NCBI RefSeq assembly: GCF_026571515.1
Contig: NW_026864466.1
Coordinates: 1 to 64,000 of the forward strand
Direction of reading: 5' to 3'
Source: Ruditapes philippinarum
Taxonomy: Eukaryota
DNA: 64,000 bases
Position numbers and translations under genes: made by a program. Below, piece by piece: positions 1,681-58,679 of this stretch (position 1 is its first letter; every line of letters begins with the position of its first letter). Below the pieces are notes generated by a model, which was not told the DNA's origin, made no database searches, and saw only the letters and a list, made by a program, of their open reading frames with translations.

Positions 1681-1689
1681 ATGATCTGA

Positions 1690-5390: not shown

Positions 5391-8300
5391 ATGGGATCGC
5401 GTTGTTGTCGTGAGAATAAAGATAAATTAGAGGTTGATGAGGGAGTAAGTCATAATAATGCAAAACGGCCGACCTCACCGTCAGAAGTTACAGTGGCTGA
5501 CAAAACACACGAAAGGTAAGGGAAAAAACTTGAAATACCTTTGAATTAGTTGATGATTACAGAAGTCTTAACAATAAATACTGGCTGAGTGGCTATGTAT
5601 GTTCACAAAAATTTTGCAAATGTCAAAAATGGACTTTTTGTGTGCAGAAAATTTTGCGAAAGTATGATTTCTTGAACTTAATACTGTTTTGGAATATCAT
5701 AAATTGGGCAGCTACATGTTAAGAATAGTTTAATACCTTTATTATTTATAACATTGTTTAAAATATATATTGCTTGTTTGATAAAGGACCTCAACGCACA
5801 TTTCTCCATCATACTTTAAAATATGGTTTGTTATATGAATAATATATTGTTTCATGTGATTTGTTAAGACCAAACTTACACAAACAAAGCAAGCGATGAG
5901 AAAAATTAATCCCAGTACTTAAACAATCAAACTTTATGCACTAAAGATGCTGTATGGAAACGTGTTTTCAAGAGATAAAAAAAAACGTTTGCCTTAAAAG
6001 AAATAAAATTTGCGCGATCACATATTTGCAAATAATTTCAATTCGCAACAATCGCAAATATTTCCACGTCGCAAAATAAACTACTAACACAGTAAGTTAA
6101 AATATTTATCTTAAATGGGGATAACAATACTAAATTGATTCGACTAATTTTGTCCCTATATCCTGAATAATACAAGAAATAAGTGAATCTTTGCGGAGTG
6201 CTTGTAATTTTTTCTTTATAAGTACATTACATTTAGGTTGTCAAAAATGTGTAACTTTTTTTTTTTTTGCGCGCGCTCCAACCGTTTTTTCTTTTTTCGG
6301 TTACCACCTTAAGCATTTAGAAATAAATAATGTTGAATTATGTTTGTTTTATTCCATACTAAAGATGTCTTTACAAAGAAAAGATGTACAAAAATGAAGT
6401 GAAAAAGCTAGAAAAACAACTGATGGACCTTGAAAAACTGACTATAGATAAAGATAAAGAGATTATTACACTAACAGAAAACCATAACCAACAGATGGAG
6501 GAGCACATTTTGAAGTAATGATATTTATTATCATTAGTTTATATGTTTAAGAAAATAGAATTATTAATGAAAATGTATGTATTGTAGTGTTATAAGGTTC
6601 TGGTAGAGTAGCATTTTGTCAACAGGATAAATCAGAGGAATGGCATAAATCTTGGTAATTTTTAATGTTGTAAACACAAACATCATAAGTTTATCACGCC
6701 ATTCGAATTAATGATTATTAAGAGTTTCCTCATTTTTGAAAAACAAATCCTTCTAATAGCAAAATTATTGTTCAGAAATATATCCATACTGGTCGGAAAC
6801 CATCAACCGGACACTTTTGGAACATTTTTCCGTACATATTTTATAATTTTTAACCTAGAGACCAAACAATTTGACACAGTTCAGCTAGGTTCTTCTCCTA
6901 ACTAACAAACTAATTTGTTTATTTCTGATTGTATTGACACTTGCATCTGAGGCTCGTAAAGGAGGGTATCAAAATTACCTAAATTGTCTACACTACAGTA
7001 CCATGTGTCCGGACAGATATGTACATGATGTGATTTAATTCAGATAAAAGCTTGGGTGTTATGATTTTTGATTTGTAACATGATATACAATATGTCAACA
7101 ACAAATGCTGAAGTTTTGGATATTCTATTATTCACTATGCAAATGATTATAGCTGGTATATGAGGTTAGGCATTGCTTTCTTGACCCCCGAATTTCAACG
7201 TCAACATTCTTGAAATAGACATTAAAATATTACCATTTACGGAGGTTGAAATAAATTTATTTACTTAATTTTTAAAGAAACATGCACTTATTGTTGATAA
7301 AAAAGTGACTGACAACCACAGAACAAAGTAAATACTAAATTAAGCATTTTCATGGCCGTCCGGGTTTGGTGGTTGTCCGGTTTTGGTGTTCCCAACCAGA
7401 AGTGGTAAATTAAGCTTACATTTTGCATACAGGTGACCTTTAAGACTTATAACTGTCCTATGTTGTCAATTTTACTGTTCTTTATAGTGCCCATTACCTA
7501 TGATCTACTTATAGGTCTACCTTTTCTAATGTTGAATTATGTTTGTTTTATTCCATATTTAAGATGTCTTTACAAAGAAAAGATGTACAAAAATGAAGAG
7601 AAAAGGCTAGAAAAACAACTGATGGACCTTGAGAAACTGACTATAGATAAAGATAAAGAGATTATTACACTAAAAGAAAACCATTATCAACAGATGGAGG
7701 AGCAAATTTTAAAGTAATGCTATCTATTATCATTAGTTTATATGTTTAAAAAAATAGAATAATTATTGAAAATGTATTTATTGTAGTGTTATAAGGTTCT
7801 GGTAGAGCAGCATTTTGTCAACAGGATAAATTAGAGAAATGGCATAAATCTTGGTAATTTTTAATGTTGTAAACACAAACATCATAAGTTTATCACGCCA
7901 TTCGAATTTATGATTATTAAGAGTTTCCTCATTTCTAAATTTTATTTACATTTTGCATACAGGTGACCTTTAAGATTTATAACTGTCCTATGTTGTCAAT
8001 TTTACTGTTCTTTATAGTGCCAATTACCCATGGTCTACTTTAACTGTTTCTTGCTTTTTTCAGACATGAATATGAACGCAATGCACTTGATAGAAACATT
8101 TCAAAGCAAAGAGAACAGAATCGAGAACTGAGGGAGGAAAATGATACGCTCTTGACAAGGTAAAATATTGTCAATGTTGATACACTCTTGAAAATATATA
8201 AATTAAAATATAATTATAATATTATTTTTTTCAATATCATTTGTGGAAAATCTTGCTTGCTTACTCATACTTGTTCAAAGGTTACGATTATATTAGTGTA

Positions 8301-11300
8301 TTAGTCTCACAATTGTGCAGATCACTAAGATCACGACCAATATACGAGATCCATATTTGGAGGTTACCTTAGTGTTAATTGACAAATTTAAGCCTTCTAT
8401 ATTTATGACGACAAATGTTTTAAGACATATATTTTAAGACATACCGCACGCTTAGTGTTCAACCCATTTACAGTTGGACACTACGCTTTCCTCTTTTAAT
8501 TACATCTGACGGACCAAGTGGGAGACTCTATGATGGACAGTTCTTAAAGCCCTTTGGGACTGAATTGCCTTAATGTTTGTCTTCTGTCTTGCTTCGTCGG
8601 GCCCTTGTAGGTGATTTTCTTTGTTGCTCTGTCTTCCTTTAGGACATCGAGTACCTTTGTTATGGTCATTGGGTTAACTTTTATATGTTTTTACATGATC
8701 ATTTTTGTGTTTTACTTATTTAACCTTTTGTAACCATAACAACTGTTAGAATTTCACTTGGGGGGGGGGGGCTGAGAGCGAGGTTTGGTGCACCATTAAC
8801 CGGTTGGTTTAAACTCCCCAGCAGTATTTATGCTGCTGACCGTTCCAAGGCGGCGCCCCTCTGTGTTCCTCAGATGTATGTCTATGTTGTTTCATACTGT
8901 TTTGGTGACACTTGTGTCCCTTGTTGTTTTCTCGTCTACGGTAAGTATCTTCCCCTTTGCCCCTAGTTTTTATTTATTTTATGTATCTCCTCCCTTCTCC
9001 TGATCTCCTGTCCCCTTCCCCTGTGCCCTTTGACTTTATGGGCCTATTTTCAATCATTTATTTGTTTTCTTTTAGTGCCTTATTAGTAACTAATTGTTTA
9101 TGGTTTTAGTGGTTAGCCTGCCCATGCCCTTGTGCCCTGTCCTGTTTTTGTTTTGGGGTCCTCCTGGGCTCCTTGCCACTGGCTCTTATTGCTGGGTCGG
9201 GTGAGGGTTGCTTCATTGAACGCCGCCTTTCCTTGTCGATCTTGTTTATCATATTTTGAACAAGTAACTGTACCAGAAACAAACAGACTTATTTCCTGGA
9301 ATATTTATGATGGTAACAAATGATTGAGTTCCCTAAGCATAACAATTGCAGGCCTCTGCAGAGTTACGATACTAAAATCTCCCAGACTGATACAAAGTCT
9401 AGCCCCAACAGATTGATAGTAATAAAAAATGACAACAAATGAAGTCTCAATTCTCATTAAAACTCAATCATTCAATCAAACCTTAACCAGGTGCCTTGCT
9501 TAAACTACAACAGTACTTATGTTTACCTGTTTATCAACGTGATTGTAATAGTTTACAATTTACTATAAGTAGGTGTTTAGAAAAGGGGAAAGAAAACAAT
9601 GAAAAACCAAAAAGGGCAATGTCTTTATGATATGTTTATATTTCTGCTGTATTTGCAGATTCAGTGATGTTGCCAGTGCTAAGCTTACCGACGGGAACCC
9701 TAATATTGCAGACTTGAGTGATAAAAACCGACCTACAAAATTAGCTGAACAATATTCAGAACTCTATGACAATGAATGGACTGACGCCTTTGGTGTATTA
9801 AAAGGTGGAAACTCGGAAGAAAATGCATGCCGTATTCTTTTACACATGTTTTGTGTAAGAATAAGAATTAATTTCATAACTTATAAAAGACAAAATAATA
9901 AAAAAATAAATAAAAATATTTCGGAAAAAATCTGATTTGCCACATACGTGTTTAATTCGATAAATAAAAATAAGATTGTAGAAATAATGAATGTTAATTT
10001 TACCATGAGTGTACAACAGCAATGAATATAAATATCATGTTTGTATTTTTATTTTCTAATTGTTTTGCAGGACATTTATATAGCTTGTATAAAAAAGGCC
10101 GGACAAGATTGTGATAATGTGACAGATGCCATCAAGACCTTTCTCGATGTATGTTTTTATGTGTACTGTTTATCGTATTTATGTTCTCGTCGCTTTTCTC
10201 TGCATTATTATAAAATCAAAAACATACACCCTAAAAAACTGGGAATCAAAATTGATATTGGTATCGTTTAATACGTAAGTGTTGTCATTCTAATTTAATT
10301 CATTTTTTTCTAATTTTCACTGTTCGTGTCATAATCCTAAAATATTAAAAAGGTAGACATATTTGGAATAGATAAGAATTTAAGTTATTACTTTCATTGC
10401 AATTATGTTATTGAGGATGAATATAATTTTTTCTTTTGAATGTTCACTATATAACGATATCAGAGCTGTCTATTTAAAATATACGTGGTTACATCACCAT
10501 TCCCACGATTTATTTTATACCCTTGTGTAATCAACAATAACAAATGAAGTAATATCTATTGCTAAATATTTATATCATGCAATGAATGTAAGAAAGGAAT
10601 AGCTAAATAAGCATTTCAAAATTCAATTCATTTCATCTAGTTACAAATGTAGTTGCAATTTATCACTCAATCACAGTACCGTTTGATTATATTTTGTAAT
10701 TTGTATTTTGAACCTGAGGTCTTTATTACCAGAAATAAACTGAAACTGAACTGAAACTAAATATATTTTTTAATCTTAAACTGTCCATGTTGACGATCTC
10801 TTTTGTAAATGTCATTTAAAGCAAAGTTTTATGTTATGTTAGAAACAGGTCGGTTATTATGATAAAATATAATGAATTCATGATCTTTATCATTAGGGGC
10901 AGCAACCACCAGTCGAGTTATTGAAACAACTGAAAGACAACAGAAAGAACAATACCGCAGGACAAAAAACTATTATTAAACAGGTATTGATATAAACCAA
11001 TGTCAGCATATTTTGATATATCATTCGGCAATTGGAAACAATGTGAAAATAAACTGGAAAACGTTTTATTTAAATTATTTTTTCGGTTAAGTGGATTGAT
11101 GTTAATGTACTCGTAATGCTAACTTAATACTAAATTATACTAAATTATAGGAAACAGCGCTTGCATTGCTAAAATGAATAGAGACGTATACTCATTTGTA
11201 GTTGTGACTGTATTCATAATATCATTTATTTCAGGAAATTAAAGGAAAAATAAAGTGTATTTTACCCGAAAAAGAACTCCGAAAGGACCAACATGTTAAA

Positions 11301-11597
11301 CGATTTTTTAAACAGTGGTATAGTTTTGTTGCGTTAGCAGTTCAGATTCCCAAACCCTCTTGTTGTGCAAATATGATCGGCTTGATGAACTGCATGATAG
11401 TACTTGTTACAAGCTTATACAAAACGCGTATTTACATAGCATACATAGTATGGCCAGTATTATACTTGCACGAAAATGGAAACATTTTAATGAAAGGCAT
11501 TGCTCAGTGTAAGGCTAAAAACAGCAAACACAGTAGTGTACATTCTCTAACATCAACAAAACCAAAAACAGGAATGAGTTACAACAATTTGATTTGA
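5391..11597 (+). CDS. MIEAP/SPATA18-like domain protein, paralogue A (~414 aa as assembled; last exon corrupted, either pseudogenising or sequence error)
   Basis: Predicted exons: 5391-5515, 6365-6514, 7564-7713, 8064-8159, 9659-9854, 10071-10148, 10897-10983, 11235-11597, all GT-AG and phase-compatible. N-terminus MGSRCCRENK; core DGNPNIADLSDKNRPTKLAEQYSELYDNEWTDAF; IVWPVLYLHENGNILMKGIAQ. The CWRMAVQDPP segment of B is garbled by small indels. Confidence 0.8.
6329..7935 (+). repeat. Local duplication of a ~400-bp segment containing the 150-nt coiled-coil exon of gene A (~6329-6735 and ~7528-7935)
   Basis: Near-identical exon and flanking intron sequence: EKMYKNEVKKLEKQLMDLEKL vs EKMYKNEEKRLEKQLMDLEKL. 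Confidence 0.92.
8431..9255 (+). mobile_element. 3' end of a non-LTR retroelement (possibly Penelope-like) in a gene A intron
   Basis: Degenerate ORF end ILRHTARLVFNPFTVGHYAFLF followed by the common molluscan tail motif 'ggtttaaactcccca...ctgaccgttccaaggcgg'. More GC-rich than its flanks and absent from the equivalent intron of B. The family call is from memory only. Confidence 0.5.
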
Positions 11598-13217: not shown

Positions 13218-13237
13218 TTGTGTGTGTGTTGGTGTGC

Positions 13238-13283: not shown

Positions 13284-13285
<2 letters not shown>

Positions 13286-15316: not shown

Positions 15317-16659
15317 AAAAGGTCCCTTCTTTAAGTTCATTTGAAAGGGGAATAATTTGGTGGAATTTTAGACAGGGAAACAGGCAGTTATCTTTCATGG
15401 CTAGGGAATATGGCCGACTGAAATCATGCATGCAAGTTTGTAAGTGAAATGTAGTATAAATTCATAGACATTTCGGAGTTAGTTTAAGGTAAAAATTAGA
15501 AAATCATATAAAAATAGCTTTTAACAGAAACTCAAAAGATGTCTACATAGCTTTATGGCCAAGATTGCCCAAAAAGGGTACAGAAAGACGATTTTTTAAG
15601 AATTCCCCCTTACGATTACGGACCTGACATTGAAATTATTGTTGTAAAAATGTTGAAATATCATATATATTAGCAAATATAGAAGTCAATTTAATTTTGT
15701 TGAAATCGTCCATATAAAAACTATTTTATTAAAACGCTATAATATATATACATTTTATATAAATTTTATAACACTTTAAAATCGAGGTTAATTAGTCATT
15801 CTGAAAACACGTGTAATGTTAGTAATGCATTTTAGTTTTCGGTTTAGCTTAATTTAATCATTTATCCGACTTGACTGAGATGCCAAAAAAGAAAAAAATA
15901 TTAGTCACATATATATTTAAATAAATTTTTAAACTCTTGAGAACTTAAGATGGGGTGCGTGGAATAACACACATTTTGTCCGGTTCCTTGTAACACAAGT
16001 CATGGAAATGCAAGTCACGTACACTATTGTCACTTCACAAAATCAATAAACATTGATGAGATTGCGTGTATAAACGAAAGTTACTTAAATTACGATTTAA
16101 TCATTTCATAAAGAAATTCACTATGTCATGTTACTAAAACCACCCGGTTAGAATGATAAACTAGCTGCAAATTAACACCGGTCACGTGCAACCTGCTTGA
16201 CACTTACCGCCTTGCCAAATCCACTTTCAAAGTAATATCAATAGTGTAATATTATGTAATACATGGGTAATAAAATGTGATCTTTTAACTTCCTGCTGTT
16301 TTAATTTTAAAATATTGATGAAAAAAGTCACCTAATGATACCTTGAACAGAGGACTTTTGGACGTTTGGTCGTTAAATTATAAGTCCCGCTAATTTTGTG
16401 TATCTGTTATAAATATCAATTCACGTTTTAAGTACTTAACGCTTCAATTCATCCCAAAATTTCTTTTTTCTGGGTGCCCTACGCCGAATGCGCATGCGCG
16501 AAATGCAACATACGTTGCTATGAAAAATCGTACTGTAAAAAGGTCTATATGTATAACGATATATTCTTAAATAGCAAGGCGTGTTATCTGAGTTAATTTG
16601 ATCAGTGACTGTAATAGCATGTAAAAAATATTGATTAAAGTAAAAAAGCATTGCGCTAC

Positions 16660-17629
16660 CATAAGAATGTTGAAGTAAATCAGGAAATTGGCTGTCTGCC
16701 ACTTTCGTTAACATTCAAAAGCTTCTGTCCATTCGTGTGTAAAATTCTTGATAGTTCTCCCCAAGTCTTGTTGGACGGTTAATGTCACTTAACTCTTGGA
16801 TGTTTGCGTTTTTCGATGCGATGACTAATGTCACTTAACTCTTGGATGTTTGCGTTTTTCGATGACTGGCTAAGACTGAAAAGTAAAATACAACGTTAGG
16901 TAAAAAACACATTTTGTGTAAATAACAGAATTCAGACTTTTGTTACAGTCAACAATATAGGGACAACCATAAAGAAGCGTTTTGCTGCATTTCTTATGTA
17001 AATTTAATCCCTATTAAATTGAATCGAATAATGAAAAAATTAGGTGAAATATCTTCTGCGCTTTCTGTCCGCTTAATTAGAACTTTTGATGCTTGTGGGA
17101 AAAATGAATTCGGAAAACTTTGAAAAACCTAGATCTAAGTAATAAAGAATTTTAATTTGATAATATAATAAAACAATTCATGTATGAAGAGATCGGTGAA
17201 AATCTATGAGTCTATGGACCTAGCAAAAGCTCATACAATGATGTACAATTGTACAATACCTTGTGTTAGAATCATCTGTTTCTTCCCCGGTTCTTGAGAG
17301 TTGATCCCTTACCGTACTTTCAGCACGTTGTAGAAGTTTGATTTGATCATTCTGTTCTTTTATCGTTTGTTGCATTTGGCGTTTGTCATTTGTCATGTGT
17401 TTTCATCAACATCTCAAAAGTATGACTTGCTTTTTCAAATACATCTTCTCGATAATCCTTTAAGCCTTTTTGGTCTCTTCTGCACTCTGAATAAACTGTG
17501 TCGTGAAGAGCTTTATATCCTTCTGTATTGCTTTTCGGCATCATTTTGTAGTTCAACTACTTTGATTCGAAGACGTTGATTTTTCTTTTCTTAGCTGGCG
17601 ACTTCAGTCGCCTTGTACTTGATATTATC
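16660..17629 (-). pseudogene. Decayed inverted fifth MIEAP-like paralogue (coiled-coil exon + core exon)
   Basis: Minus-strand exon 16875-16660 follows a strong acceptor (tattttacttttcag) and reads LS..SKNANIQELSDINRPTRLGENYQEFY/EWTEAFE...NILM|gt, with a ~46-bp internal tandem duplication and frameshifts. The upstream exon 17629-17313 is coiled-coil-like with stops and ends NVLKVR in phase 2 at a gtaagg donor. Confidence 0.82.
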
Positions 17630-20600
17630 CTAACATGTGATATAGCACATAAATTACACCTTTTTAAAGGACTTGTATACGAATTTAATTATCATGATAA
17701 CCAAGGCCACAGCATAAACTAGTTATTTGCGGACATGAACGCTTATATGCGTCAGATGATTACGTACATTAATAATATCGTCTGATATCTAAATAGCTGA
17801 AAACCGAATACAATGTCAATTGTATGTCAATACAAGACACATTAAGAGAGATAACTAACATTAATTCCCTAATTAACCTGCCGCGGTTGTGTCTTCGAAA
17901 TGTTATTTTAGGGTTGTAATTTATTATAAAAAGAAAACATTATGGTGACGAACAACATTTGTTTACCCTTTTAAGCGGAGAGTGTACATGGAAACAACAA
18001 CAGCTAGTATTTTGCAGTTTTTAAACCCGTTGTTTTCATCTTTATTTTAGATAAAAATCATGATGTCATGTTAAAAAATGTGATAGAACCTTATTTTAAT
18101 TCATGTAATTTTGAATTTTTGTATGACAAGGTATAAATATTGTTCTTTCATATCAGACAGAAATATCTACTCTTTACAACGGTGCGCGAAAAACTTGTCT
18201 TACACCGCCGTGTTAGACAAGTCACGTGCTTTAAATGACTCATTCCCGCGCGCTTTAACGAAAGAATTGCATTCTTAAGATGATGTCATGTTGCCGTTAT
18301 AATTTAAGTAAATTCATGTACAACTATAAAAAAGTGCTGAAAAAAAATGTTAGTTTTCGTTATTCCTCGTTACCGCCGTAAACAGTTACCTTCGCGCTAG
18401 ACATCTAGGTCTGTACCGGCAGCCGGTGTAGTATTATTATACAGAGTGTGCCTTAATAGTTAACTGCAATTCTAAAGATTTAATTGCGTTTAAATATATC
18501 CCTTACTTATAAACATATTCGAAGTAGATTAAAGGATCAAATACAAAATAGGTAGATTTATCTAAATATATCTATTTTTTGAACTAGTAACACACGCCAT
18601 AAAACACACAAAGCCGTCGTTTTAAATACAAAAAACAATAGTTTGTAGATTCTAATATATTTCACAAAAATAAAGAGCTATAGATCATTGAAATATTTAA
18701 TTCTTTATCATTTTCCAAGTTTTCCCGTACACGCTCTGCCAGATCCAGAACATTTGTTGTCAATAATGCAAATCTTATTTCTAGGGGCTCATGTCTTGAG
18801 TCGAGAGTGATATAAATCGCCATGGCTAGAGCACCTTTGCATCTTTCTACAATATAAAAATATAAAATGACATTCTACTTGCTTTTACATGAAAAAAAAA
18901 AAAATAAAAAAAGTAAAATTAAAAATGAAAAAAAAAAAACCATAAAATAAATAAGTAAATTAAAATAAAAAATATAATCTAATTTTAATTTTCTTTTACA
19001 GACGGAACTAATTGCATTGGAATAAACTTAAGTATCATAAGGTAAAAAAAGTTACCATTTCATTTAGACGTATCGTCGTCTTTAGTGCAGTAGCGGGTAA
19101 ACTTCTATTAATGAATATAATAAAATCGATGTAAAGCGAGAGTGAGGCGAGTATTAGTCTTAGATGAATGTAATTAGTGTATATGAAAAAACGACAACAG
19201 ATATAATATTAGTTTTATTAATGTTAAGTCCGATTCCACACAAATTTCAACTTGAAAAGTAAAGTTGCGGCTTTGTATATAATGAATATACGCTTAGTAC
19301 TATATCATTTTCAAGTTGTTTATGTGAACAGCAAGAAACTCTGTCTGACACAATCGGGCAATCTAAACTACTCTTACTCTTCTCCGAGCTATTTTTATAT
19401 TAATTACAATGTAATGCAACTTTTTACGTATGGTATAACAATAGAATATATGAATTAGTAAAATCATGCATAATTTGATTTTATTGAATAGGTGTTTTAA
19501 TGATTGTTGAAAGTCAATATAGTTTGTCAATTACTCAACTATATTTTTTGTCATTTTCCAAATTTCTTTAAACTACTTCTAGAATAACAATAGTAATAAA
19601 AGTTAATTGACTTTAACCGGATAATCATTCAATTCTAATGACTGAATTTTACTTGTTATTTACTGACCAGTTTTCGTAAATAACGCTTCACAACAACACC
19701 TTGCTGAATTTAGTATGAAAATGAGCTGATGTAAATGTTACGATATCGATATTTCTGACATTTATTGCAATTAACTTCCTAGTACAGGTATCAAGAAATA
19801 ATTTTCTAACATTTCCTAACATTACGATTCACTTACAAAAGTGTGGTCCATTAGAACATCTGGTGATGTAATTCGACAATTTGTGGTTAAGGTCAAATTG
19901 TTTATTGTAACCTGCCTGCGATTTGTTGCAAAAAAGCAGTGAAAACCGTCAATTAAATGGGAAAATTATTTTAGAAACTAACTGCATTGTTTTCGTAAGA
20001 AAATGAACTGTTTCATTACTGTCTTGGATAATTTCACAATTTAAAGAAGTGTTACCAGTCCTGTGATCAGCAGACAATTTCAGTGAAAAAGGGGTAGTCA
20101 TCTTGGGGACATTTTTCGAAACAACTGGTCGGTCAACCCTATATAACAAGATCAATATGATGCGTCTGGTATGCCATTTTTCTATGTCATTTTTCTAGAA
20201 TAATCACATTTTTAGCATGAATTCTCAATTTTAAGGTTGGTTAAGTGATCATGTCTTATAATTCAAGTCTATGGAAAAATTAATGCGTAGTCTTGGAAAA
20301 TGAAAAAAATAACAAAAAGAACATAAAAAAAAACCAACAACAATACACATGATCTGATAGGTGGAAGTCAGATTCCTTTTCACGAAACCTTTCTTTGTGT
20401 TAGAACACTTTTACATTTCAGTGGTCATGAATGACTATGATAGAACACAGCGATGCAAGTCACTCAATTTGGGCTTGCAAAACGAAATAGTCGGTATATC
20501 TGTTCAGCGTTTATTTATTAAGAGTACTATTACAACTATGTATGGAAAACATTAGTAGATTGCTGTCCTGATACGTTCAATACATGTACATCACATATCA

Positions 20601-21174
20601 TTAGTGATCTAATAGAACCTTAGCTGAAGATTTAACATGATATATTCTCCTCATCCATATTTCATCCATGAATTAGCAGACCGTTTTTAACTATCAAATT
20701 TCTATTTAAGCATAAAGTTTATCAATCATTTTCATATTATTTTGTTGTTTTAAAAGTGAAATACTCTTTTTCTTTTCATAGCATTTCCATTCCGAGGCAA
20801 CATTAAATACGTAAAGAAGACGGGTACCTATAAATTACGCCTTGCATTACAGGTATTAATATGAAAAGAAACTGTTTCATAAGTGTCTAGGATAATTTTC
20901 ATTTGGGTGTTCATTTAAAAAAGTATTATCAGTCCTGTGATCAGCAGAACGAATTCTGTCAAAGGGGCTAAAGGTTGAGTACTCAATTTTAAGGTTGTTT
21001 TGTGGTCATGTCTTAATTCAAGTCTTATATGGGAAAATTAATACAGTAATCTGGACTAATAATAGAAAAAAAGAACAACAAAAAACAACAACAAAAAGCA
21101 AAAAAAAAAAAAAAAAACAAAAAAAAAAAAACACACACACAAAAAAACCCAAAACAAAACAACATGATCTGATA

Positions 21175-22355: not shown

Positions 22356-22360
22356 CTCTT

Positions 22361-23659: not shown

Positions 23660-23785
23660 GTAAGTTGGATAAGTAAGTTTTAAATTCATTGTCAGTCAAA
23701 GTGGATAATTTCAAACTCAGACATACTCTTTCTTCGAATATATTAATAGTGGAGGGAGTAACAAACTAGATATAATGGGAAATCC

Positions 23786-34566: not shown

Positions 34567-34584
34567 TATTCTAATTGTATTTAA

Positions 34585-46100: not shown

Positions 46101-48291
46101 AATTATAACAAAACTTACATTCTAGGTAATTCAAATGTTTTCGTTACCTTTGAATTGAATACTCTTGATGATTAAGGTCAAATGTGTAAATATAAGATTT
46201 GAATTCCATTATAATTTTTCAAAATTAAATTATTATGTATTCATTAAGTACTCTTTCCTACAATCTCCCTCTAATGTGTTTGACTTTTTGAGAATAAGAA
46301 AAAGTGGAACGTAGCCTCCGCTAGGCAGTATTTTTCTAAACAATTACATAAAATGTATGTCATTATGATAATGAATATCTTCTCGATTTTAATAGTTTAT
46401 GATTTGTTTTCATTTATATTTGCAGGTAATATATTTAACATGTAGAAAGAAAGCTGATGCTGACTTAAAAGCTTTTATCTCTGCTATTGATGAACTATAT
46501 GAGGTAATCTTATTCATTAGTAAAAACTCGTATATAAGTGTAATTTTGTTTTGATTCCACTTTAACTGCTGGAGTAGACCTCAGGTTCCCTTTGCATATT
46601 ATTTATAAGGCACAAACGGGCACCTGAATAGAACCACCTACGTTCCGTTAACTAGTTCGATAGCATTTTCATTTGACAAAAATCGAAAACCCTGGCGACA
46701 TTAACTACTCGGTCACGGATGCCCCATATGCCATGTACTATTTAGTATTTACACGCTATCATTAGTATTTATACATTGAGTTTTCATAGAACATTGTCAG
46801 AAAGAATATAAATTTTATAAATACATTATTATAATATTGTTATTAGTGTTTCATCAAAATATAGATACAGAGGAGTTGTAATGCATATGATAGGGGTGAA
46901 TATAGTTTTAATAACATGTTCTTATTAATCACGTTATATCAATGATTTTGCCTCCAGTCCGCCGACCTTGCAAGAGAAATGATCAAGACTGCAAAAGATA
47001 GAAGGAAAAAAAGACCCAGAATGAAGGTTGGAGAAATCAAACAGGTAAGTCAAATTCTAGAAATCAGATAAATATTCTACATTTATCTTTATATATTTTT
47101 TTTAGAGAATCGTATAATATGATATATAAAAAGAATCATCTTGATTTCAAGTAAGTAAAATATTGTGATATTCAAATGCCTAAAATATCTGTCATATAAA
47201 TAAATTGTCATTGAATTACATAGCTAGCAACGTGATAAAATACAAGTAATGTAACACTTATTCTAAATAATGACGGTATGTGCCTTTAAACACGTTTTTA
47301 AGATACTGATTTGGTGAATTGATGATTGATTGAATTAATGTTTGCATTCCATTTCTAGTTATACACTTCTGAAATGCAACAAGTTATACCTTCCGAAGAA
47401 CAGAAAGGAATCGAATCATTCCTTGATAAAAGCATCGAACTGTGCTGGCTGATGGCAATTCAAGACCCCCCATTATATGTAGACACAAATTTGTCACTAA
47501 GGGGCAAACCTTTCGAAACAAATTTGTTTAAACCGTATACGGTACAGGGCAAATATGTTGACTTTATAGTCTGGCCTGCATTGTATCTTCATGAAGGAGG
47601 GAGCTTATTGAATAAAGGAGTTGCTCAAGGAAAGAAACAGAAACATGAAACGCAAAGCCAGCTCTTTGATTATGTAGAAAATCTTCGAAGCCAAGTGAAC
47701 CGCTTATCTCTTACACCCAAGTCCTCATCAAAACCAGATACAAAATACACCAATTACACTGTAAATGAAAGAGTTGCAACAAAATATTTACAACCAGAAT
47801 CAGATACAAACGGGATACATACAGAAACATCCGCTGGAAATGCTGCATCTATTATTAAACCTGCAAAAGGTGAACCTAAAAATGAAAAATCTGCTTCAGA
47901 TAATACCAACCCTGCATCAGATTCAACCAAAAAATTAACAGAGGCATCCGCTGAATCTGTTTTACAAAGAATGGAAACGAGTACATCTTCTGAAACTCAT
48001 GCGCCCAAATCAAAACAAACAGGAATGTCCGCTAGAAGGGTTTCATCATTCACCAATATCAAATCAAATGCTGTTCAAGAAAAACAAGATTCTGAAAGTT
48101 CAACAATGTCATCACAGAAATTAATGGCAAAAAGTAATTATGAATCTGGTAGAAAATCAAGCTCATTCTCAACAGATGATAAATCGGACAGAATGAAATT
48201 ATCGGAATGGCAATCTCACCAACAATCAGGAAGTAAACAACAACCGGCTGGAAAATATAAATCAGTAACTGTTAATAATTCAAAGATGTAA
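40148..48291 (+). CDS. MIEAP/SPATA18-like domain protein, paralogue C (~652 aa, intact)
   Basis: Exons 40148-40284, 41105-41200, 41667-41780, 42286-42393, 42479-42586, 43287-43382, 44353-44554, 46426-46503, 46958-47044, 47359-48291 join in frame (1959 nt). N-terminus MGSCCSK; core NANIADLSDENRPTKLSEKYSELYDNQWTDAF; CWLMAIQDPP...IVWPALYLHEGGSLLNKGVAQ. A probable 5'UTR intron runs 39429-40064 (cag|gtaaga ... tttacag). Confidence 0.88.
40710..41835 (+). repeat. Tandem duplication (~585-bp unit) containing exons 2 and 3 of gene C
   Basis: Intron sequence 'ctttgaaaattac..ccttgaagaaaccatacaagga' and exon start 'ag|agacc...catggaaaaa' both recur; both exons end MEN.|gttaga. Confidence 0.85.
45000..46335. 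repeat. Degenerate satellite-like/HINE-type intronic repeat (TGACCTT / AAGGTCA motifs)
   Basis: Recurrent 'tgacattgacc', 'tgaccttga' and 'aaggtcaaa' motifs; ends near the small hairpin 'tagcctccgctaggc'. Confidence 0.45.
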
Positions 48292-52492: not shown

Positions 52493-55400
52493 ATGTCAGA
52501 CTGTTGTTGCTGTTCTGGCACCAGGGAGGAAACTATGCGTTTAGATCCAACGGGCCGACATAATGGAAACCAACCAGTGACAACACAGCCACAGTCCACA
52601 CAGAAGTATACAAATGGGACTCATAATTTGTAAATATATATGTGTTTTTTTCCCTATTATTTTCCTGTATTCCATATATAGTGAAAAGGTTTTGAAGCTG
52701 TTAATGGCTTTTATATACTAACATGCTTTCATATTATTATCGTCATACGTGAACTTCCCTTTAAAAATGTTGTTTTTATTTTGTTTGATTGTGCAAAATT
52801 ACACGCATGCGCATCACGCTTTATCGGCATTGAATTGAGAACCTTTCAATACGCTCACCTTGCTATGTCATTTATGAAAGAAACAGATTTTCTACCGATT
52901 CGGCCGAATTATCAACTTGTATCATTGAGAACACTTGATTTATTTACCAATAAATATTGCTATATATGATTCACTTAATTGTTTAAACTATTTATAGTTG
53001 TATAGTTATATCCTAAAGAGGGCGTATGTCAGTCTGCCTCGCAAGTTTTCAGATCTGCCCTTAATTTGGCTGTTCATAGCAGTCCTCATAAGGGATAAAT
53101 TATTACCCGATCTTAAACTTCAAACATTCAAGTAAAGTAAAAAACAAATAAGAAACAGATATCAAAGATTGGCGTTGCATATTTACAATTTGTTTACTTT
53201 AAAATACTTTGTGGTCTAGCGTTTTCATAAAATTTTCATTGTGCCTATGATACATAAACATTTATTTTTATTTTAGGTGTACCATGCCTGACAATGAAGC
53301 AAATAAAAACGCGCTGATCTCGAAGGAAAGAGAACTAAAAGATCTTCAAGCAAGGCTTCAGAAGTATGTGTATGCTAATTTATTATAATAAATGTGCAGA
53401 ATCGGTATAAAATAACTGCATATTCAACTTGATTACAAGTTTAAAGCATGTACGTAACTATGTTACACAATAGTCACTGTTCAAGCTATTTAATGCAATT
53501 TTGTTAGAATTAAGCTCGGTAAAATACAAAAAAAATGTATTTTATATAATTATGTTAGAAATAAATAATCACAGAGTATTAAATTTGTGGGCACTTTCTG
53601 TTTGTTTTGAAACTACATGTTTCTGATCTTGAACCAAACGCACATAGACTTATGCTGATTATTATTTTAACAATTTAATATTATTAATGGATGCCGATAT
53701 ATTAACTTCATGCTTTAAATGTATGTAGGTTACAAACGCTCAAAGATAAGAGAGGTAACATACCATCAAACTGCTATGGGATATCGTTGTTAAAAGTTAA
53801 GATATCATTTTAACGAATATTTTTGTCATGTTTTATTTCAATACCCAGACGTATAAGGTTATATATAGATACACAACTTTTTTGTTAAATGAAACGTTTG
53901 CACGCAACGCTGAGTGTAAACGATATAACAAGCATATGGGGTTAATATGCAAAATGAGACTAACATTAGTGTATATTTGTTTTTTTATGTTTTAAAAAGC
54001 TTAATTTGTTATTATTAATATGTACATAAAAGAGTAAGTACATAACAAAATAAGTAAATCACTTAAAATGAGTCATTTAATATATTTAATATTTAATATG
54101 CATACTGTAAACCGCACCTTTTAAAAAATCAAAATAGCAACAGCAAAAGCAAAAATCTGCCGAAATAATTTGAGTGGTTTAGTCTTTAACAATCCGATCT
54201 CATATTTCATCTGGAAACAAATGAATTTTAAAATCCACGGAATGATATTTAACTTCATTATACACCAATATATCATTCAATGTCAAACTCCCATAGGCCT
54301 ATTATATGCTCTGATTGAATATCTAGGATATATTCTCCGGAGAATATTTCTTATATCAACCAGGGGCACATAACCCTTACATAACTCTATATTGAGCAGA
54401 AGGGTATAAATCATTCTTGTACTGTTTTTGTAATGTTTATTGGTTTGAGCAAAATTACATTGTAAAAATGATGATGTGTATTGTATTTATTTCTTGACTG
54501 CGTATTTTATAAATGTTTTAGTTGTAGGTCTTTCGGTACAATAAAATAAATAACGCATGGCTGTCGGGGTGATAATTGATATTGCCTCGGGGTAATATAC
54601 CAGTTCTCGGGTCGACTATAACCTCTGTCATTCCGACAGCCAAATGTTATTTCTATAATGTTATCCCTGTGTTATCAATATATTATTTCTTATTGGCTGT
54701 GTGCGAAATATTACCAATATATGAACTCTCCCACTCTCTTTTATCGATAATTTATATATTATCTTTTACTGTAGATACTTATCTCTTTATCATCAATATA
54801 TTACTTTTTACCTGTGTTTAAATACATAATTATGTCTGTGGTATCGATATACTGGTATGATTTGACCTTGTTTCATCGATGTATGAAATATGATATATTT
54901 GCCACGCAGTCTCATTTCAAGACTTATATTGCATGGCCACGTGCTACAAAGCAGTAGACAATATTAATAGAATTATAATATTTGTATTTAATTATGTTAG
55001 TTAATACAAAGGTGTATCTGTTTCAAGAGATCAAGAGGAAATTGACAGGCTCAAACAGAAAGTAAAAGATCTTGAAACGAAAAGTAATGAACTTCTTTCG
55101 AGGTAAGAGGCTTTATTTAATGATGATTCTGTATTAAAATCGAAAAACAATTTATTGAAGAATTATCATACAATAATGATTCGAGATCACCCACCGACAG
55201 CCAAGTGTTATTTCTATAATAGTTTTCCTGTGTTATCAATATATAACTTCTTATTGGCTGTGTGCGAAATGTTACCTATATATGAACTCTCTCACTCTCT
55301 GTTATCGATATACATATATATATATTCTTGTACTGTAGATACTTGTCTCTTGTATATCAATATATTAATTTTTACCTGTGTTTAAATACATGATTTCTGT

Positions 55401-58400
55401 CTCTGGTATCAATATACTTGTATGATTTGACCTTGTTTCATCAATGTATGAACTACAATATATTTGCCTCGCAGTCTCAGTTCAAGACATATATTGGATG
55501 GTCACGTGTTACAAAGCATAATAAGACACTATTTATAGAATTTATAATATCTGTATTTAATTATGTCAGTTAATACAAATGTGTATTTGTTTTAAGAGAT
55601 CAAGAGGAAATTGACAGGTTCCAAGCAGAAAATTATCAGCTGAAACAGAAAGTAAAAGATCTTGAAACGAACAATAATGAACTTCTTTCGAGGTAAGATG
55701 CTTTATTTAATGATGAATCTGTATTAAAATCGAAAAACAATTTATAGATAAATTATCCTACAATAATGATTCGAGATCACCCAGTAAAAATAATCTACCT
55801 AGAAAAAAGATCATTATAGATCTAATAATAAATCTATTAACACATAGACCACAAACGGGGCACATTTGCATTTGTGACAAACGACACATTTGATAACATC
55901 TATAAACGACAATAGACACAGTAACAAGTGTTTAATTGTTTGCTCGAAAAAGCTCTTTTTAATAATACGTCATTTGTCTTTCGGTTTTGACTAAACTCTA
56001 TTTCCTATTGAACATAAAGAAACTATTTGTATGAAATCAGCTTTTACTTTTTTGATACAGACTCAGTGCTGTAGCGAGCGCAAAGCTTACGGACAACAAT
56101 CCGAATATAGCGGATCTGAGTGATGTGAATCGGCCGACAAAGTTAGCGGAACAATTTTCAGAATTATATGACAATGAATGGACTGACGCATTTGATGCTC
56201 TCGCGAAGGAACAAGATGAGAGTAACAATGACAAAGAAGCTTGTACAAAACTGCTGAATGTATTAAATGTAAGTCAATTAATTGCTGCTTCTTTCAATCG
56301 TTGTATTATGCTGTTTCATCAATTCAAAAGTTTTGTATGAGGAGCAAAACAGATATACCTGGAATAAAGCTATAATTCCTTGTCCATATTAAAACACTAT
56401 TATAATAGTGCAATTTCTATTTACAAGAGGTCAAGAAATATTACAATTAATCCAGGCATGACCAACACATGCCAAGTCTACACGTAGTGACAAACAACAT
56501 CGATAAAGATGCCTCCAAACTACTCATATATTTGAATATAATATTTTTGTATTTAGGTATTGTTCTACCGTATCGCTTGTTATCGTAAAAGTTTTTCATA
56601 ATTATCAGAGAACAAAGAAAAGACGTTGACTCATTTGAATCTTTACACATAAAAAATTCTTTAAAATGTTGTGATACTTATTTATCAAAAGAAGGAAAAA
56701 AGGTCGAAAGTCAATAACTTTATTTATAAACGATTACTTGAACTTTATATTGACTTAAGAGAAGTTTGATTAAACGAAAAATCGTCTTATTTTTAGAAAA
56801 TATTTTCCATCTGTCACAAAAAGGCAAGCGGTGACCTGCAAATGATGATGCAAAAGCTCTCAGTAGAGTTGTTTGGGGTAATAATATTATTTCTTGTTAT
56901 TTTATATAACTGGTACCAGTTCTAACATCGTTAAAAACTCAGTTTAGTTTTGCTGAAATAGAGAAATACAGAATCCGTAAAGAAAGCCCAACATGGCAAA
57001 ATTGTAAAATGTTGCAGGCTCGGTTTGATTGAGCCTGTTCATGGACGATACTGGAAAGTGCAAGTTACCGTCCACGCCCCCTAGCACCGGCTGAAGCCAA
57101 TGGTAATGATCTTGAGAGATTGCACTTATTTCTAGCTGGCATGAATTGAATCAATCATAGGTGATCAATAGTGTGCCTACCATTTCAATGACAGGTGTAA
57201 TGGTTTTTGCATGGCAGATCTACAAATGTGCCTCCAAATTCATCTATCTGTATTATGTATTTCTGGTACTTGACGAATACTGTTACCAATTAGTTTTTTT
57301 TAACTCAAATACTACAGCAGCTTTTCAAAAGGCGATGGTGTATTATTATATGATACACTCATCATTACGTATCATGACTCAAACAGATGTCCCATTTCTC
57401 CTAGACTTTTATAATGAAAACATTAACCTTTAATCGTAATCATGAGTAGCAGCTGTACAAAAACTTCGTGTTCTTTCTCACACAGAAGTCTAACCAGATC
57501 ACTGACCAGTAAGGATGTTTCACTGTCAGTTTTACTTTAAGTAAATTAAACCAGTTTTCGTCACAATTCTTTTAATAAATTTATTAATTAACGACTTACG
57601 ATTATAATGATATAAACAACATATTATGATCAAAGACTAACTTGTTTTATCAGATGGGTGCGCCTTCTAAAGAAGTTATGAGAGCCATAAAAGATGACAG
57701 GAAAAAGCATTATGCTGGAATGGTGGAGCAACTTATGAAGGTATCTTGAAAAGACAAAAGAAGAAAAAACTCTGGCAGTATGCGAAATGTTAAAATAAAT
57801 GTTAATATTCATTCTAAACAGATAACAATATAAAACAGTTTTTTTTCCAATCATTCCCTATTATTATGGCCTTTTTTCATTTTAAGGGTTAAATTTGCGC
57901 ATGAATAAAACAAGCAAATTATACAAATGACCATTTCTTTATTTAATTCATTGAAACCTTACAGGTAATTTCATAAAAAAACGATATTTACAAACACAAT
58001 AAACGTCTTTAAACTATATTTGGATCATAGATATATTAAAAGTGTTTAAGGGATGCCATCTATACTAGAGTTCATTTAATTACTTTAAATATATGATAAA
58101 GATCACACACATACAGTTATTATCTTTAAATCCGCAGTTGGCTTATTTGTATAATTTTTATATTTGTTTTAGGATTGTAAATTCTCATTCGACGATGTAA
58201 TTACAGAAGAAGAAGCGTTGTTAATTGCAAAGTTCATAGAAAAATGCGTGTCTGTGTGTTGGCTTATGTCCATACAGGACCCGCCAGTCTATATAGACGT
58301 CAAAATTGATATGCACGGTGAACGTCTTTCTACAGACATTTACAAACCCTACACAAAGTCTGGGAAATTCATAGATTACATTGTTTGGCCAGTGTTGTAT

Positions 58401-58679
58401 TTATTTGAAGGAGGCAATATCCTTAGTAAAGGGATTGCACAGGGAATGAACGAGGTGGCGAGTGATGATATCATTGTTTCAATGGAAGAGGATAAAGCTT
58501 TAGAGAAGATTGATGGCGATCTGGGAAAGAGTAAGGACAATGATATGGTGATGAATGAAAACAGTGGCAATGAAATTAAAGAAGATAGTGACAAGATTCT
58601 TAATAATGATCGTTTTCTAGGAATGAGTGAGAATGGGAATGGAAATGGAGATGATCAAGATAAGATGACGCACTTTTAA
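52493..58679 (+). CDS. MIEAP/SPATA18-like domain protein, paralogue D (~425-433 aa, intact)
   Basis: Exons 52493-52629, 53277-53363, (53729-53754 tentative), 55028/55030-55102, 55597-55692, 56061-56268, 56797-56877, 57654-57740, 58173-58679. N-terminus MSDCCCCSG; core NPNIADLSDVNRPTKLAEQFSELYDNEWTDAF; CWLMSIQDPP...IVWPVLYLFEGGNILSKGIAQ. Confidence 0.87.
54632..55782 (+). repeat. Tandem duplication (~560-590-bp unit) containing the DQEEIDR coiled-coil exon of gene D
   Basis: Unit runs from 'ccgacagcca' to 'tcgagatcaccca' twice; exons of 75 and 96 nt. Confidence 0.93.

What the first reader, a model, noticed from the sequence alone, without database searches (positions are those of the whole stretch)
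5391..58679. Expanding cluster of lipid-anchored, coiled-coil MIEAP-domain proteins: candidate undescribed gene family/system
Seen: four same-strand paralogues (plus two relics) share an exon scaffold of a 96-nt exon ending LL(T/S)R, a ~200-nt core, 78/81 nt, 87 nt and a long last exon. They also share near-invariant motifs NIADLSD.NRPTKL.E.YSELYDN.WTDAF, CW.M..QDPP and IVWP.LYL.E.G..L.KG.AQ. Established: these motifs resemble the C-terminal domain of vertebrate Mieap/SPATA18, a single-copy p53-induced mitochondrial quality-control protein. Inference: here the domain is redeployed in a birth-and-death tandem family with a different architecture (acylation motif, variable coiled-coil stalk, domain, variable tail). 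That turnover pattern is typical of invertebrate immune/stress families, so this may be a membrane-tethered surveillance or organelle/pathogen-clearance system rather than a Mieap orthologue.
Basis: partly seen in the sequence, partly recalled or inferred. Interest (0 to 1): 0.88.

Follow-up and report, generated by a model that had tools for sequence, protein, structure and literature searches.

The report
Clam cluster of Mieap-domain genes
This stretch of the Manila clam genome holds three intact and one decaying copy of a Mieap-domain gene. They belong to a family already published as massively expanded in bivalves, so the cluster is real but largely ordinary, and the function of these proteins is still untested.

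Summary
Four plus-strand multi-exon genes carry the quoted motifs and the quoted exon scaffold (96 / about 200 / 78-81 / 87 nt / long last exon).

- **Domain.** Pfam MIEAP (PF16026) is matched above threshold by copies 2, 3 and 4.
- **Copy 1.** It has five frameshifting indels in the C-terminal half of the domain, falls below threshold and is probably decaying.
- **Species and annotation.** The genome is Ruditapes philippinarum. Copies 1 and 3 are RefSeq genes LOC132725706 and LOC132725704, both named 'uncharacterized'.
- **Not a special cluster.** The genome has at least 149 MIEAP exon matches on about 65 contigs. This scan noted two similar arrays elsewhere in the same genome.
- **Not undescribed.** Regan et al. 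2021 (PMC8382680) reported a Mieap orthogroup averaging 53 genes per bivalve against 0.6 in other taxa.
- **Mostly old.** Synonymous sites between copies 2, 3 and 4 are saturated, and each has a closer paralogue on another contig. Only copies 1 and 2 are a recent duplication.
- **Architecture.** A hydrophilic coiled-coil half, a hydrophobic domain and a disordered tail mirror vertebrate Mieap. The predicted N-terminal myristoyl/palmitoyl signal is the difference.
- **Immune role.** Nothing here supports it.
- **Fold leads.** Weak resemblances to GrpE and to plant GIL1/IRKI are leads only.
- **RNA evidence.** None could be obtained.

The parts
5391..11597 (+). Copy 1 = RefSeq LOC132725706 (XP_060566872.1, 414 aa). 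Coding exons: 5391-5515, 6365-6514, 7564-7713, 8064-8159, 9659-9854, 10071-10148, 10897-10983, 11235-11597. N-terminus MGSRCC. The C-terminal half of the MIEAP domain is scrambled by frameshifts, so this is probably a decaying copy.
   Evidence: P0156 maps at 100% with GT-AG introns. It has five indels relative to copy 2. Pfam gives only 25.5 bits on profile positions 1-81 of 195, and the last exon has no Pfam hit.
6328..7934 (+). Tandem duplication inside copy 1 (6328-6735 against 7527-7934, 95% identical). It doubles a 150-nt coiled-coil exon, and both copies are included in the RefSeq model.
16648..16858 (-). Inverted relic of the core MIEAP exon. A possible stalk-exon remnant lies at 17259-17393 (-).
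   Evidence: tblastn with family members. The family HMM gives E 6e-07 at 16739-16816.
26490..32072 (+). Copy 2, intact (my model, 497 aa). Exons: 26490-26614, 27860-27943, 28846-28941, 29523-29718, 29849-29926, 30889-30975, 31245-32072. N-terminus MGSCFS.
   Evidence: ORF-preserving GT-AG model. Pfam MIEAP on the last exon gives E 7.9e-10. A whole-gene paralogue lies on contig C8435 at 85-87% nucleotide identity.
40148..48291 (+). Copy 3 = RefSeq LOC132725704 (XP_060566867-9, 652 aa). Ten coding exons: 40148-40284, 41105-41200, 41667-41780, 42286-42393, 42479-42586, 43287-43382, 44353-44554, 46426-46503, 46958-47044, 47359-48291. N-terminus MGSCCS. It has the longest stalk (duplicated stalk exons) and a 220-aa Ser/Lys/Thr-rich tail.
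   Evidence: P0032 maps at 100%. Pfam MIEAP covers 1-193 of 195, E 3e-16. Repeats are and composition.
52493..58679 (+). Copy 4, intact (my model, 385-413 aa). Exons: 52493-52593, 53277-53363, (optional 55028-55102), 55597-55692, 56061-56259, 56797-56877, 57654-57740, 58173-58679. N-terminus MSDCCCC (Cys cluster, no Gly2). The 5' exon boundaries are uncertain.
   Evidence: ORF-preserving GT-AG models. Pfam MIEAP on the last exon gives E 9.9e-14. A tandem duplicate of the LLSR exon with its intron spans 54633-55193 and 55194-55783.
15..11559 (+). Segmental duplication block A. It is paralogous to block B (19378-31575) at about 80% nucleotide identity. Each block holds a C1q gene region followed by a MIEAP gene.
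   Evidence: Self-blastn of the window.
19378..31575 (+). Segmental duplication block B, the counterpart of block A.

Best explanation
**What it is (shown).** This is one of many tandem clusters of the bivalve-expanded MIEAP-domain gene family (Pfam PF16026) in the Manila clam, Ruditapes philippinarum. It holds three intact genes (copies 2, 3, 4), one decaying recent duplicate (copy 1), an inverted exon relic, and a fifth, possibly broken copy just beyond the window.

**Protein layout.** Each intact protein has four parts:
1. A short N-terminus with a predicted lipidation signal: MGxxC(C) in copies 1-3 and a CCCC cluster in copy 4.
2. A hydrophilic, charged, helical stalk of variable length, built from duplicable 84-150-nt exons.
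3. A constant MIEAP domain of about 213 aa, a helical bundle followed by a small beta sheet.
4. A variable, polar, low-complexity tail.

**How it works (inferred, about 0.35).** The proteins most likely act as Mieap-like amphiphilic scaffolds. In human Mieap the hydrophobic domain partitions into or binds anionic phospholipid. The stalk and tail would mediate self-association and weak multivalent contacts. The N-terminal acyl anchor would place these paralogues on the cytosolic face of cellular membranes rather than inside mitochondria.

**How the cluster arose.** Ancient duplications were followed by one recent segmental duplication. That duplication copied a C1q gene together with a MIEAP gene, and the two blocks have since decayed reciprocally.
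For: **Family and species**
- Motifs and Pfam matches.
- RefSeq identity and species.
- Exact GT-AG exon maps.
- At least 149 MIEAP exon matches on about 65 contigs of this genome.
- 1,735 clusters at 50% identity match the family at E <= 1e-3 in a library of 1.84 billion proteins.
- Published bivalve expansion: PMC8382680.

**Conservation**
- The domain is constant in length (212-214 aa) and 46-53% identical among copies 2-4. Stalk and tail are below 35% identical and vary 94-219 aa and 29-220 aa.
- Domain nonsynonymous difference is 0.33-0.36 per site against saturated synonymous difference of 0.8-0.9. This indicates long-term purifying selection.

**Structure and composition**
- AlphaFold2 models of family members are confident. 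P0005 has pLDDT 87.7, with one long helix at residues 22-119 followed by a helical bundle and a beta sheet.
- The domain-only protein P0144 has pLDDT 88.3 and pTM 0.81.
- Composition mirrors Mieap. The N-terminal half is 32-43% charged, the domain is 41-45% hydrophobic and the tail is polar.
- Human Mieap is described as hydrophilic coiled-coil/IDR half, hydrophobic structured C-terminal region needed for partitioning with cardiolipin, then a C-terminal IDR (PMC10845071).

**Acylation signal**
- Copies 1-3 fit the N-myristoylation consensus G-{EDRKHPFYW}-x(2)-[STAGCN]-{P} and have Cys at positions 4-6.
- Of the 165 retrieved homologues that start with Met, 22 fit the same consensus and 5 more have N-terminal Cys clusters.
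Against: - No RNA or protein evidence could be obtained for these loci.
- Lipidation rests on a sequence pattern only, and copy 4 lacks Gly2.
- No lipid-binding test exists for any bivalve member. Even for human Mieap, lipid binding by the C-terminal region is a proposal by the authors.
- The homodimer prediction gave no verdict.
- No solved structure resembles the domain significantly, so the fold gives no functional anchor.
Confidence: 0.8

Rival explanations
1. The cluster is a membrane-tethered immune or stress surveillance system, or an organelle/pathogen-clearance system, that diversifies by birth and death like invertebrate immune families.
For: - The family is large, tandemly arrayed and includes decayed copies.
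- Stalk and tail are hypervariable.
- A C1q-domain gene sits in the same duplicated block.
- The MIEAP Pfam annotation is enriched among gill-expressed genes of a mussel (PMC5549309).
- MIEAP-annotated protein spots change with cadmium in Dreissena (PMC11036304).
Against: - There is no infection- or stress-response data for these loci.
- The variable parts are low-complexity or coiled-coil regions, which drift quickly without selection. No recognition-type domain is present.
- Copies 2-4 are ancient, with saturated synonymous sites, so turnover here is not rapid.
- dN/dS of the one recent pair is 0.34 in the domain exons, so there is no sign of positive selection.
- The proteins lack a signal peptide or TM segment and would sit on the cytosolic face.
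Confidence: 0.12
2. The MIEAP domain has a GrpE-like fold and these proteins are membrane-anchored co-chaperones (nucleotide-exchange-like factors) for Hsp70-family ATPases. HSP70 is also hugely expanded in bivalves.
For: - GrpE proteins are the top hits of two different structure aligners for two models.
- Foldseek on P0005 gives E 0.38-1.7 and on the domain-only model E 0.16-0.55.
- The overall layout is similar: long helix, helical bundle, small beta domain.
- HSP70 and Mieap orthogroups are both listed as bivalve expansions in PMC8382680.
Against: - hhalign of the MIEAP profile against E. coli GrpE gives probability 0.25%.
- hhalign against a 19-sequence GrpE alignment gives probability 0.5%.
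- Ten family members show no Pfam GrpE hit even at E <= 10.
- ESM Atlas structural neighbours are plant GIL1_IRKI_C and unnamed fungal and ciliate families, not GrpE.
Confidence: 0.06
3. The genes do the canonical Mieap/SPATA18 job, mitochondrial quality control and cardiolipin metabolism inside mitochondria, simply in many copies.
For: - Same Pfam domain and same overall hydropathy layout as Mieap (PMC10845071).
- This is how the published bivalve papers interpret the family (PMC8382680, PMC5549309).
Against: - The window copies are not the best MIEAP matches in the genome. C6225 (90.9 bits) and C6085 form a separate outgroup.
- A co-translational N-myristoyl/palmitoyl signal directs proteins to the cytosolic leaflets of membranes and is hard to reconcile with import into mitochondria.
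- The domain is only 46-53% identical among the copies.
Confidence: 0.1
4. Most of the cluster is evolutionary debris: neutral duplicates on their way to loss, with no specific function beyond that of a few family members elsewhere.
For: - Copy 1 is frameshifted.
- Copy 5 has an in-frame stop.
- There is a relic exon.
- About 16 of the 149 genome-wide matches contain stops.
Against: - Copies 2, 3 and 4 keep intact ORFs with canonical splice sites and all near-invariant family residues despite saturated synonymous divergence.
- RefSeq models exist for copies 1 and 3.
Confidence: 0.1

Closest known systems
Bivalve-expanded Mieap orthogroup (OG24 of Regan et al. 2021, Genome Biol Evol, PMC8382680); Pfam PF16026 MIEAP
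   Same: Same Pfam domain, a bivalve host, a multi-copy tandem organisation and the same conserved motifs. The window genes are members of this expansion.
   Different: The paper gives counts and an inferred 'mitochondrial quality control' role only. It does not describe exon design, the N-terminal acylation signal, the variable stalk and tail, or any specific locus.
Vertebrate Mieap / SPATA18 (p53-induced; forms cardiolipin-containing condensates; Ikari et al. 2024, PMC10845071)
   Same: The MIEAP domain, and the overall order: a hydrophilic coiled-coil/IDR N-terminal half, a hydrophobic structured domain, then a C-terminal disordered tail.
   Different: Mieap is single-copy, mitochondrial and p53-regulated, with no N-terminal acylation signal. 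The clam copies are paralogues outside the clade of the best-scoring (candidate canonical) locus. Three of the four start with a myristoylation/palmitoylation consensus.
Dually acylated (SH4-type, Met-Gly-x-x-Cys) membrane-anchored proteins such as Src-family kinases and G-alpha subunits
   Same: An N-terminal MG(S)xC(C) pattern that fits the N-myristoylation consensus, with adjacent Cys residues for palmitoylation.
   Different: This is a resemblance of a short motif only. There is no homology beyond it, the modification is untested, and copy 4 lacks Gly2.
GrpE / GrpEL1 nucleotide exchange factors (PF01025)
   Different: There is no sequence or profile similarity (hhalign probability <= 0.5%). 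The structural scores are below significance, and the MIEAP domain is about twice as large as the aligned part of GrpE.
Plant GIL1 / IRK-interacting protein C-terminal domain (PF24994, often with the DUF641 coiled coil)
   Same: It is the nearest named non-MIEAP neighbour in the ESM Atlas, both by structure (TM 0.57/0.51 over 187 residues) and by language-model features (0.77-0.81). Some members of the matching clusters also carry DUF641 (29% in one cluster), which I take, from my own knowledge, to be a coiled-coil region preceding the domain.
   Different: The feature scores are below the tool's 0.9 mark, there is no HMM hit, and I could not retrieve sequences to test the link. It is a lead only.

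Membership tests
Pfam PF16026 MIEAP domain family | HMM match above the gathering threshold (27 bits) covering the domain | tested here: met
   Copy 3 full model: 60.4 bits, profile 1-193 of 195. Last exons alone of copies 2, 3 and 4: 39.5, 41.3 and 52.2 bits. Copy 1 fails, with 25.5 bits on profile 1-81 only.
Pfam PF16026 MIEAP domain family | Near-invariant family residues (DLSD, RP, YDN.WT, W..QDPP, VWP, KG.AQ) | tested here: met
   These columns are at least 90% conserved in alignments of 116-120 homologues. They are present in copies 2-4. Copy 1 lacks the CW..QDPP block.
Bivalve Mieap expansion (Regan et al. 2021) | A bivalve genome with tens of MIEAP genes in many loci | tested here: met
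   The species is Ruditapes philippinarum. The genome has at least 149 exon-level matches on about 65 contigs. Some identical pairs on different contigs may be uncollapsed haplotypes.
Canonical Mieap/SPATA18 orthologue | It should be the locus closest to the Pfam/vertebrate consensus and single-copy | tested here: not met
   The best Pfam scores are at C6225 (90.9 bits) and C6085 (69.8 bits). They form a separate, well-supported outgroup to 31 expansion members, including the window copies.
Canonical Mieap/SPATA18 orthologue | p53-inducible, mitochondrial localisation, cardiolipin condensates | not testable with these tools
   This needs expression and imaging experiments.
N-myristoylated / palmitoylated proteins | Met-Gly start fitting G-{EDRKHPFYW}-x(2)-[STAGCN]-{P}, with nearby Cys | tested here: met
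   Copy 1 starts MGSRCCR, copy 2 MGSCFSR and copy 3 MGSCCSK, and all three fit. Copy 4 starts MSDCCCC and does not fit, having a Cys cluster only. The actual modification is not testable here.
GrpE (PF01025) | Sequence or profile similarity to GrpE | tested here: not met
   hhalign probability is 0.25% against E. coli GrpE and 0.5% against a GrpE alignment. No Pfam hit appears at E <= 10.
GrpE (PF01025) | Shared fold | tested here: inconclusive

The most novel reading that the evidence does not exclude
Two linked ideas remain open.

1. **Lipid-anchored subfamily.** Roughly one in six of the homologues retrieved with an MG-starting family member has an N-terminal acylation signal. These may have moved a Mieap-type lipid-phase or condensate scaffold from mitochondria to other cellular membranes.
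2. **Older superfamily.** The MIEAP domain may belong to an older eukaryote-wide 'coiled coil plus alpha/beta domain' superfamily. Candidates are plant GIL1/IRKI and unnamed families in Mucoromycota and ciliates. A GrpE-like core might link it to Hsp70-family partners, which are co-expanded in bivalves.
Probability: 0.12. Interest if true: 0.7.

Novelty: new member of a known kind. Interest (0 to 1): 0.33.

Why it matters
As found, this is a locus-level description of a gene family whose bivalve expansion is already published and whose members are annotated. It adds several things:
- exon-exact anatomy of four copies;
- evidence that one annotated gene, LOC132725706, is decaying;
- a picture of how the family grows, by segmental duplication of a C1q-plus-MIEAP block followed by reciprocal decay, and by tandem duplication of stalk exons.

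The useful new hooks are the predicted N-terminal lipid anchor and a confident domain model with no significant solved relative. Either could guide the first functional experiment on a family of about 50-150 genes per bivalve genome. Its presumed 'mitochondria-eating' role has never been tested.

Tried and rejected
- **Homodimer prediction.** Complex prediction with two copies of P0005 returned 'no answer' (score 0.07). It counts neither for nor against dimerisation.
- **Solved relatives by sequence.** A profile search of PDB sequences gave only coiled-coil noise in the stalk.
- **Fold search with the full-length model.** The long helix dominated the results. I repeated the search with a domain-only member.
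- **GrpE homology.**
  - A word-index search with E. coli GrpE returned only proteins 88-99% identical to it, among those listed.
  - A genome-contig scan also returned only near-identical enterobacterial sequences.
  - I obtained a more diverse GrpE set through the genome search.
  - hhalign was negative.
- **Canonical orthologue.** An ESM Atlas look-up with the C6225 exon returned only mollusc MIEAP clusters and did not settle orthology.
- **dN/dS among copies 2-4.** This is not computable because synonymous sites are saturated.
- **Second relic.** I found only a weak + strand hit at 18099-18257 (E 0.036) and do not accept it.
- **Literature.** Pairing 'Mieap' with GrpE or myristoyl in the paper library returned only unrelated co-mentions.
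- **Spliced models.**
  - No typed spliced sequence was sent to any search tool.
  - Copies 1 and 3 were searched as the database proteins P0156 and P0032.
  - Copies 2 and 4 were searched exon by exon by reference.
  - Joined coding sequences were built only inside local scripts, for frame checks, identity, composition and dN/dS.

Full report
**1. What is in the sequence**

The window is AT-rich (GC about 32%) and has no N runs.

| Motif | Position (kb) |
|---|---|
| NIADLSD..NRPTKL..(Y/F)SELYDN.WTDAF | 9.70, 29.57, 44.40, 56.10 |
| CW.M..QDPP | 31.34, 47.44, 58.26 |
| IVWP.LYL...KG.AQ | 11.45, 31.46, 47.57, 58.38 |

Exon-by-exon hmmscan, by reference, gives Pfam PF16026 (MIEAP).
- The last exons of copies 2, 3 and 4 score E 7.9e-10, 2.2e-10 and 9.9e-14 on profile positions 114-193. 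All are above the 27-bit gathering score.
- The four core exons give sub-threshold matches to profile positions 1-45.
- The last exon of copy 1 gives nothing.

**2. Species, annotation and exact gene models**

A full-library phmmer search with a transcript-derived homologue (P0005) returned two proteins whose N-termini are identical to copies 3 and 1. An exact look-up identifies them.
- P0032 is XP_060566867-9, LOC132725704.
- P0156 is XP_060566872, LOC132725706.
- Both are 'uncharacterized protein [Ruditapes philippinarum]' on a contig of 91,954 bp, which is this contig.

A script that requires the concatenated exons to translate exactly to these proteins places them on the window with canonical GT-AG introns.
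- Copy 3 has ten coding exons of 137, 96, 114, 108, 108, 96, 202, 78, 87 and 933 nt.
- Copy 1 has eight coding exons of 125, 150, 150, 96, 196, 78, 87 and 363 nt.

By analogy, ORF-preserving GT-AG models exist for the other two copies.
- Copy 2: 125, 84, 96, 196, 78, 87 and 828 nt, giving 497 aa.
- Copy 4: …96, 199, 81, 87 and 507 nt, giving 385-413 aa. Its 5' exons are uncertain.

On the full RefSeq models, copy 3 matches MIEAP over 1-193 of 195 positions (60.4 bits). Copy 1 reaches only 25.5 bits, over positions 1-81.

No typed spliced sequence was sent to any search tool. Copies 2 and 4 were searched exon by exon. Joined coding sequences were used only inside local scripts.

**3. State of the copies**

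- **Copy 1.** Aligned with copy 2, its last exon carries five frameshifting indels (+1, -4, -1, -1, -1). These scramble the CW.M..QDPP half of the domain, and the frame happens to be restored before IVWP. It is annotated as a gene but is most likely decaying.
- **A recent segmental duplication.** Copy 1 and its 5 kb upstream region (15-11559) duplicate 19378-31575 at about 80% nucleotide identity.
  - The upstream part of block A holds an intact C1q-domain ORF at 2271-2678 (E 2e-14).
  - Its counterpart in block B is split over three frames and has no Pfam hit.
  - The two blocks have therefore decayed reciprocally.
- **Relic.** A family HMM built from eleven homologues finds one further relic, an inverted core exon at 16739-16816 (E 6e-07; tblastn 16648-16858). 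I find no convincing second relic.
- **Fifth copy.** A fifth + strand copy lies outside the window at contig positions 71016-74347. It has an in-frame stop immediately before VQDPP.
- **Stalk exons.** These are tandemly duplicated in three copies:
  - copy 1: 6328-6735 against 7527-7934, 95% identical;
  - copy 3: two pairs;
  - copy 4: 54633-55193 against 55194-55783, 86% identical.

**4. Genome and family context**

- Searching the whole 1.41-Gb assembly with PF16026 gives 149 exon-level matches on about 65 contigs.
- Most matches are last exons in tandem arrays. About 16 of them contain stops. A protein query gives the same picture.
- Some pairs on different contigs are identical (C13070 and C12669), so part of the count may be uncollapsed haplotypes.
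- In a maximum-likelihood tree of 33 last-exon domains, each window copy pairs with a closer relative on another contig, all with strong support:
  - copy 2 with C8435 (90% aa);
  - copy 3 with C8251 (75%);
  - copy 4 with C597 (78%).
- The two best Pfam scorers, C6225 (90.9 bits) and C6085, form a long-branch outgroup (98/94). They are the candidate canonical Mieap loci.
- The C8435 gene matches copy 2 over its whole length, introns included, at 85-87% identity.
- Between copies 2, 3 and 4, synonymous sites are saturated (pS 0.8-0.9). Nonsynonymous difference is 0.33-0.36 in the domain and 0.56-0.58 in the tail.
- The recent pair, copies 1 and 2, has dS 0.33, dN 0.11 and omega 0.34 over the 96-nt exon plus the domain exons.

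The cluster is therefore old, the domain is under purifying selection, and only one duplication is recent. Two earlier first-stage notes of this scan describe similar arrays elsewhere in the same genome.

**5. What is already known**

- Regan et al. 2021 (PMC8382680) list a Mieap orthogroup (OG24) of 807 genes. It averages 53.1 per bivalve against 0.6 in 17 other species, with three duplications in the bivalve ancestor. They interpret it as mitochondrial quality control.
- Gerdol et al. 2017 found the MIEAP Pfam annotation enriched in mussel gill (PMC5549309).
- A Dreissena proteomics study found MIEAP-annotated spots that respond to cadmium (PMC11036304).
- The family has 1,735 clusters at 50% identity with E <= 1e-3 in a library of 1.84 billion proteins.

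The family and its expansion are thus described, although no member of the expansion has been studied functionally.

**6. Architecture and likely mechanism**

| Region | Length | Identity among copies 2-4 | Composition |
|---|---|---|---|
| N-terminus and stalk | 94-219 aa | below 35% | 32-43% charged |
| MIEAP domain | 212-214 aa | 46-53% | 41-45% hydrophobic |
| Tail | 29-220 aa | below 35% | polar, low complexity |

This is the layout Ikari et al. 2024 describe for human Mieap (PMC10845071). They report a hydrophilic coiled-coil/IDR N-terminal half, a hydrophobic structured C-terminal region and a terminal IDR. In their work the C-terminal region is needed for partitioning into cardiolipin-containing condensates.

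- Copies 1-3 begin MGSRCC, MGSCFS and MGSCCS. All three fit the N-myristoylation consensus and have adjacent Cys.
- Copy 4 begins MSDCCCC, a Cys cluster without Gly2.
- Of the 165 retrieved homologues that start with Met, 22 fit the consensus and 5 more have N-terminal Cys clusters.
- I found no paper that connects Mieap with acylation.

AlphaFold2 models are confident.
- P0005 has pLDDT 87.7: one long helix at 22-119, then a helical bundle at 132-264 and a beta sheet at 289-324.
- The domain-only member P0144 has pLDDT 88.3 and pTM 0.81.

My best reading, inferred at about 0.35, is a lipid-anchored, self-associating scaffold on the cytosolic face of membranes, presenting a Mieap-type lipid-interacting domain.

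**7. Fold comparison**

- No solved structure matches significantly.
- GrpE proteins nevertheless rank first for both models with Foldseek (E 0.16-0.5).
- Profile tests are negative. hhalign probability is 0.25% against E. coli GrpE and 0.5% against a 19-sequence GrpE alignment. No Pfam GrpE hit appears at E <= 10.
- In the ESM Atlas the nearest non-MIEAP neighbours are plant GIL1_IRKI_C (PF24994; TM 0.57/0.51 over 187 residues; feature score 0.77-0.81). Unnamed Mucoromycota and ciliate clusters follow.
- All of these are leads below the tools' own thresholds.

**8. Verdict**

The cluster is an ordinary member of a published, genome-wide bivalve expansion and is not a newly expanding or undescribed system. 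The immune reading has no support beyond analogy. What may be worth following is the predicted lipid anchor and the unexplained fold of the domain.

**9. Limits**

The homodimer prediction gave no verdict.

Noticed in passing
window 2271-2678 (+) and 22334-22941 (+): An intact C1q-domain ORF (PF00386, E 2e-14) lies upstream of copy 1, inside the duplicated block. Its counterpart upstream of copy 2 is split over three frames and has no Pfam hit. The two duplicated blocks have therefore decayed reciprocally: C1q is kept and MIEAP lost in block A, and the reverse in block B.
   Followed up: partly
window 23203-23505 (+): An ORF with a weak match to the P2X7 receptor intracellular domain (PF20478 P2RX7_C, E 4e-5, 24 bits against a cut-off of 23.5).
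   Followed up: no
window 30021-30645 (intron of copy 2) and 34579-35171: An interspersed repeat of about 620 bp. More than 40 scored copies across the genome are 87-90% identical, out of 4,812 first-look candidates. It is probably a high-copy transposable element.
   Followed up: no
window 13740-15271: A satellite array of 10.6 copies of a 146-bp unit (about 79% matches). It sits between copy 1 and the inverted relic exon.
   Followed up: no
window 36823-36968 (+) and 56953-57097 (-): A 146-bp segment repeated in inverted orientation at 93% identity. One copy is intergenic and the other lies in an intron of copy 4. It is possibly a small mobile element.
   Followed up: no
G000:C12953:71016-74347 (L001/L004), just beyond the window: A fifth + strand MIEAP gene of the same cluster. 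Its core exon is intact and there is an in-frame stop immediately before VQDPP in the last exon.
   Followed up: partly
G000:C8435:12316-18536, C8251:27962-28204, C597:4815-5045: Each of copies 2, 3 and 4 has a closer paralogue on a different contig (90%, 75% and 78% aa). For copy 2 the similarity extends over the whole gene, introns included (85-87% nt). This suggests either an old block duplication of the cluster or very divergent haplotypes.
   Followed up: partly
G000:C6225:104566-104859 (-) and 108108-108284 (-): The best MIEAP Pfam score in the genome (90.9 bits). It is an outgroup to the expansion in the tree and is the candidate canonical Mieap/SPATA18 orthologue.
   Followed up: partly
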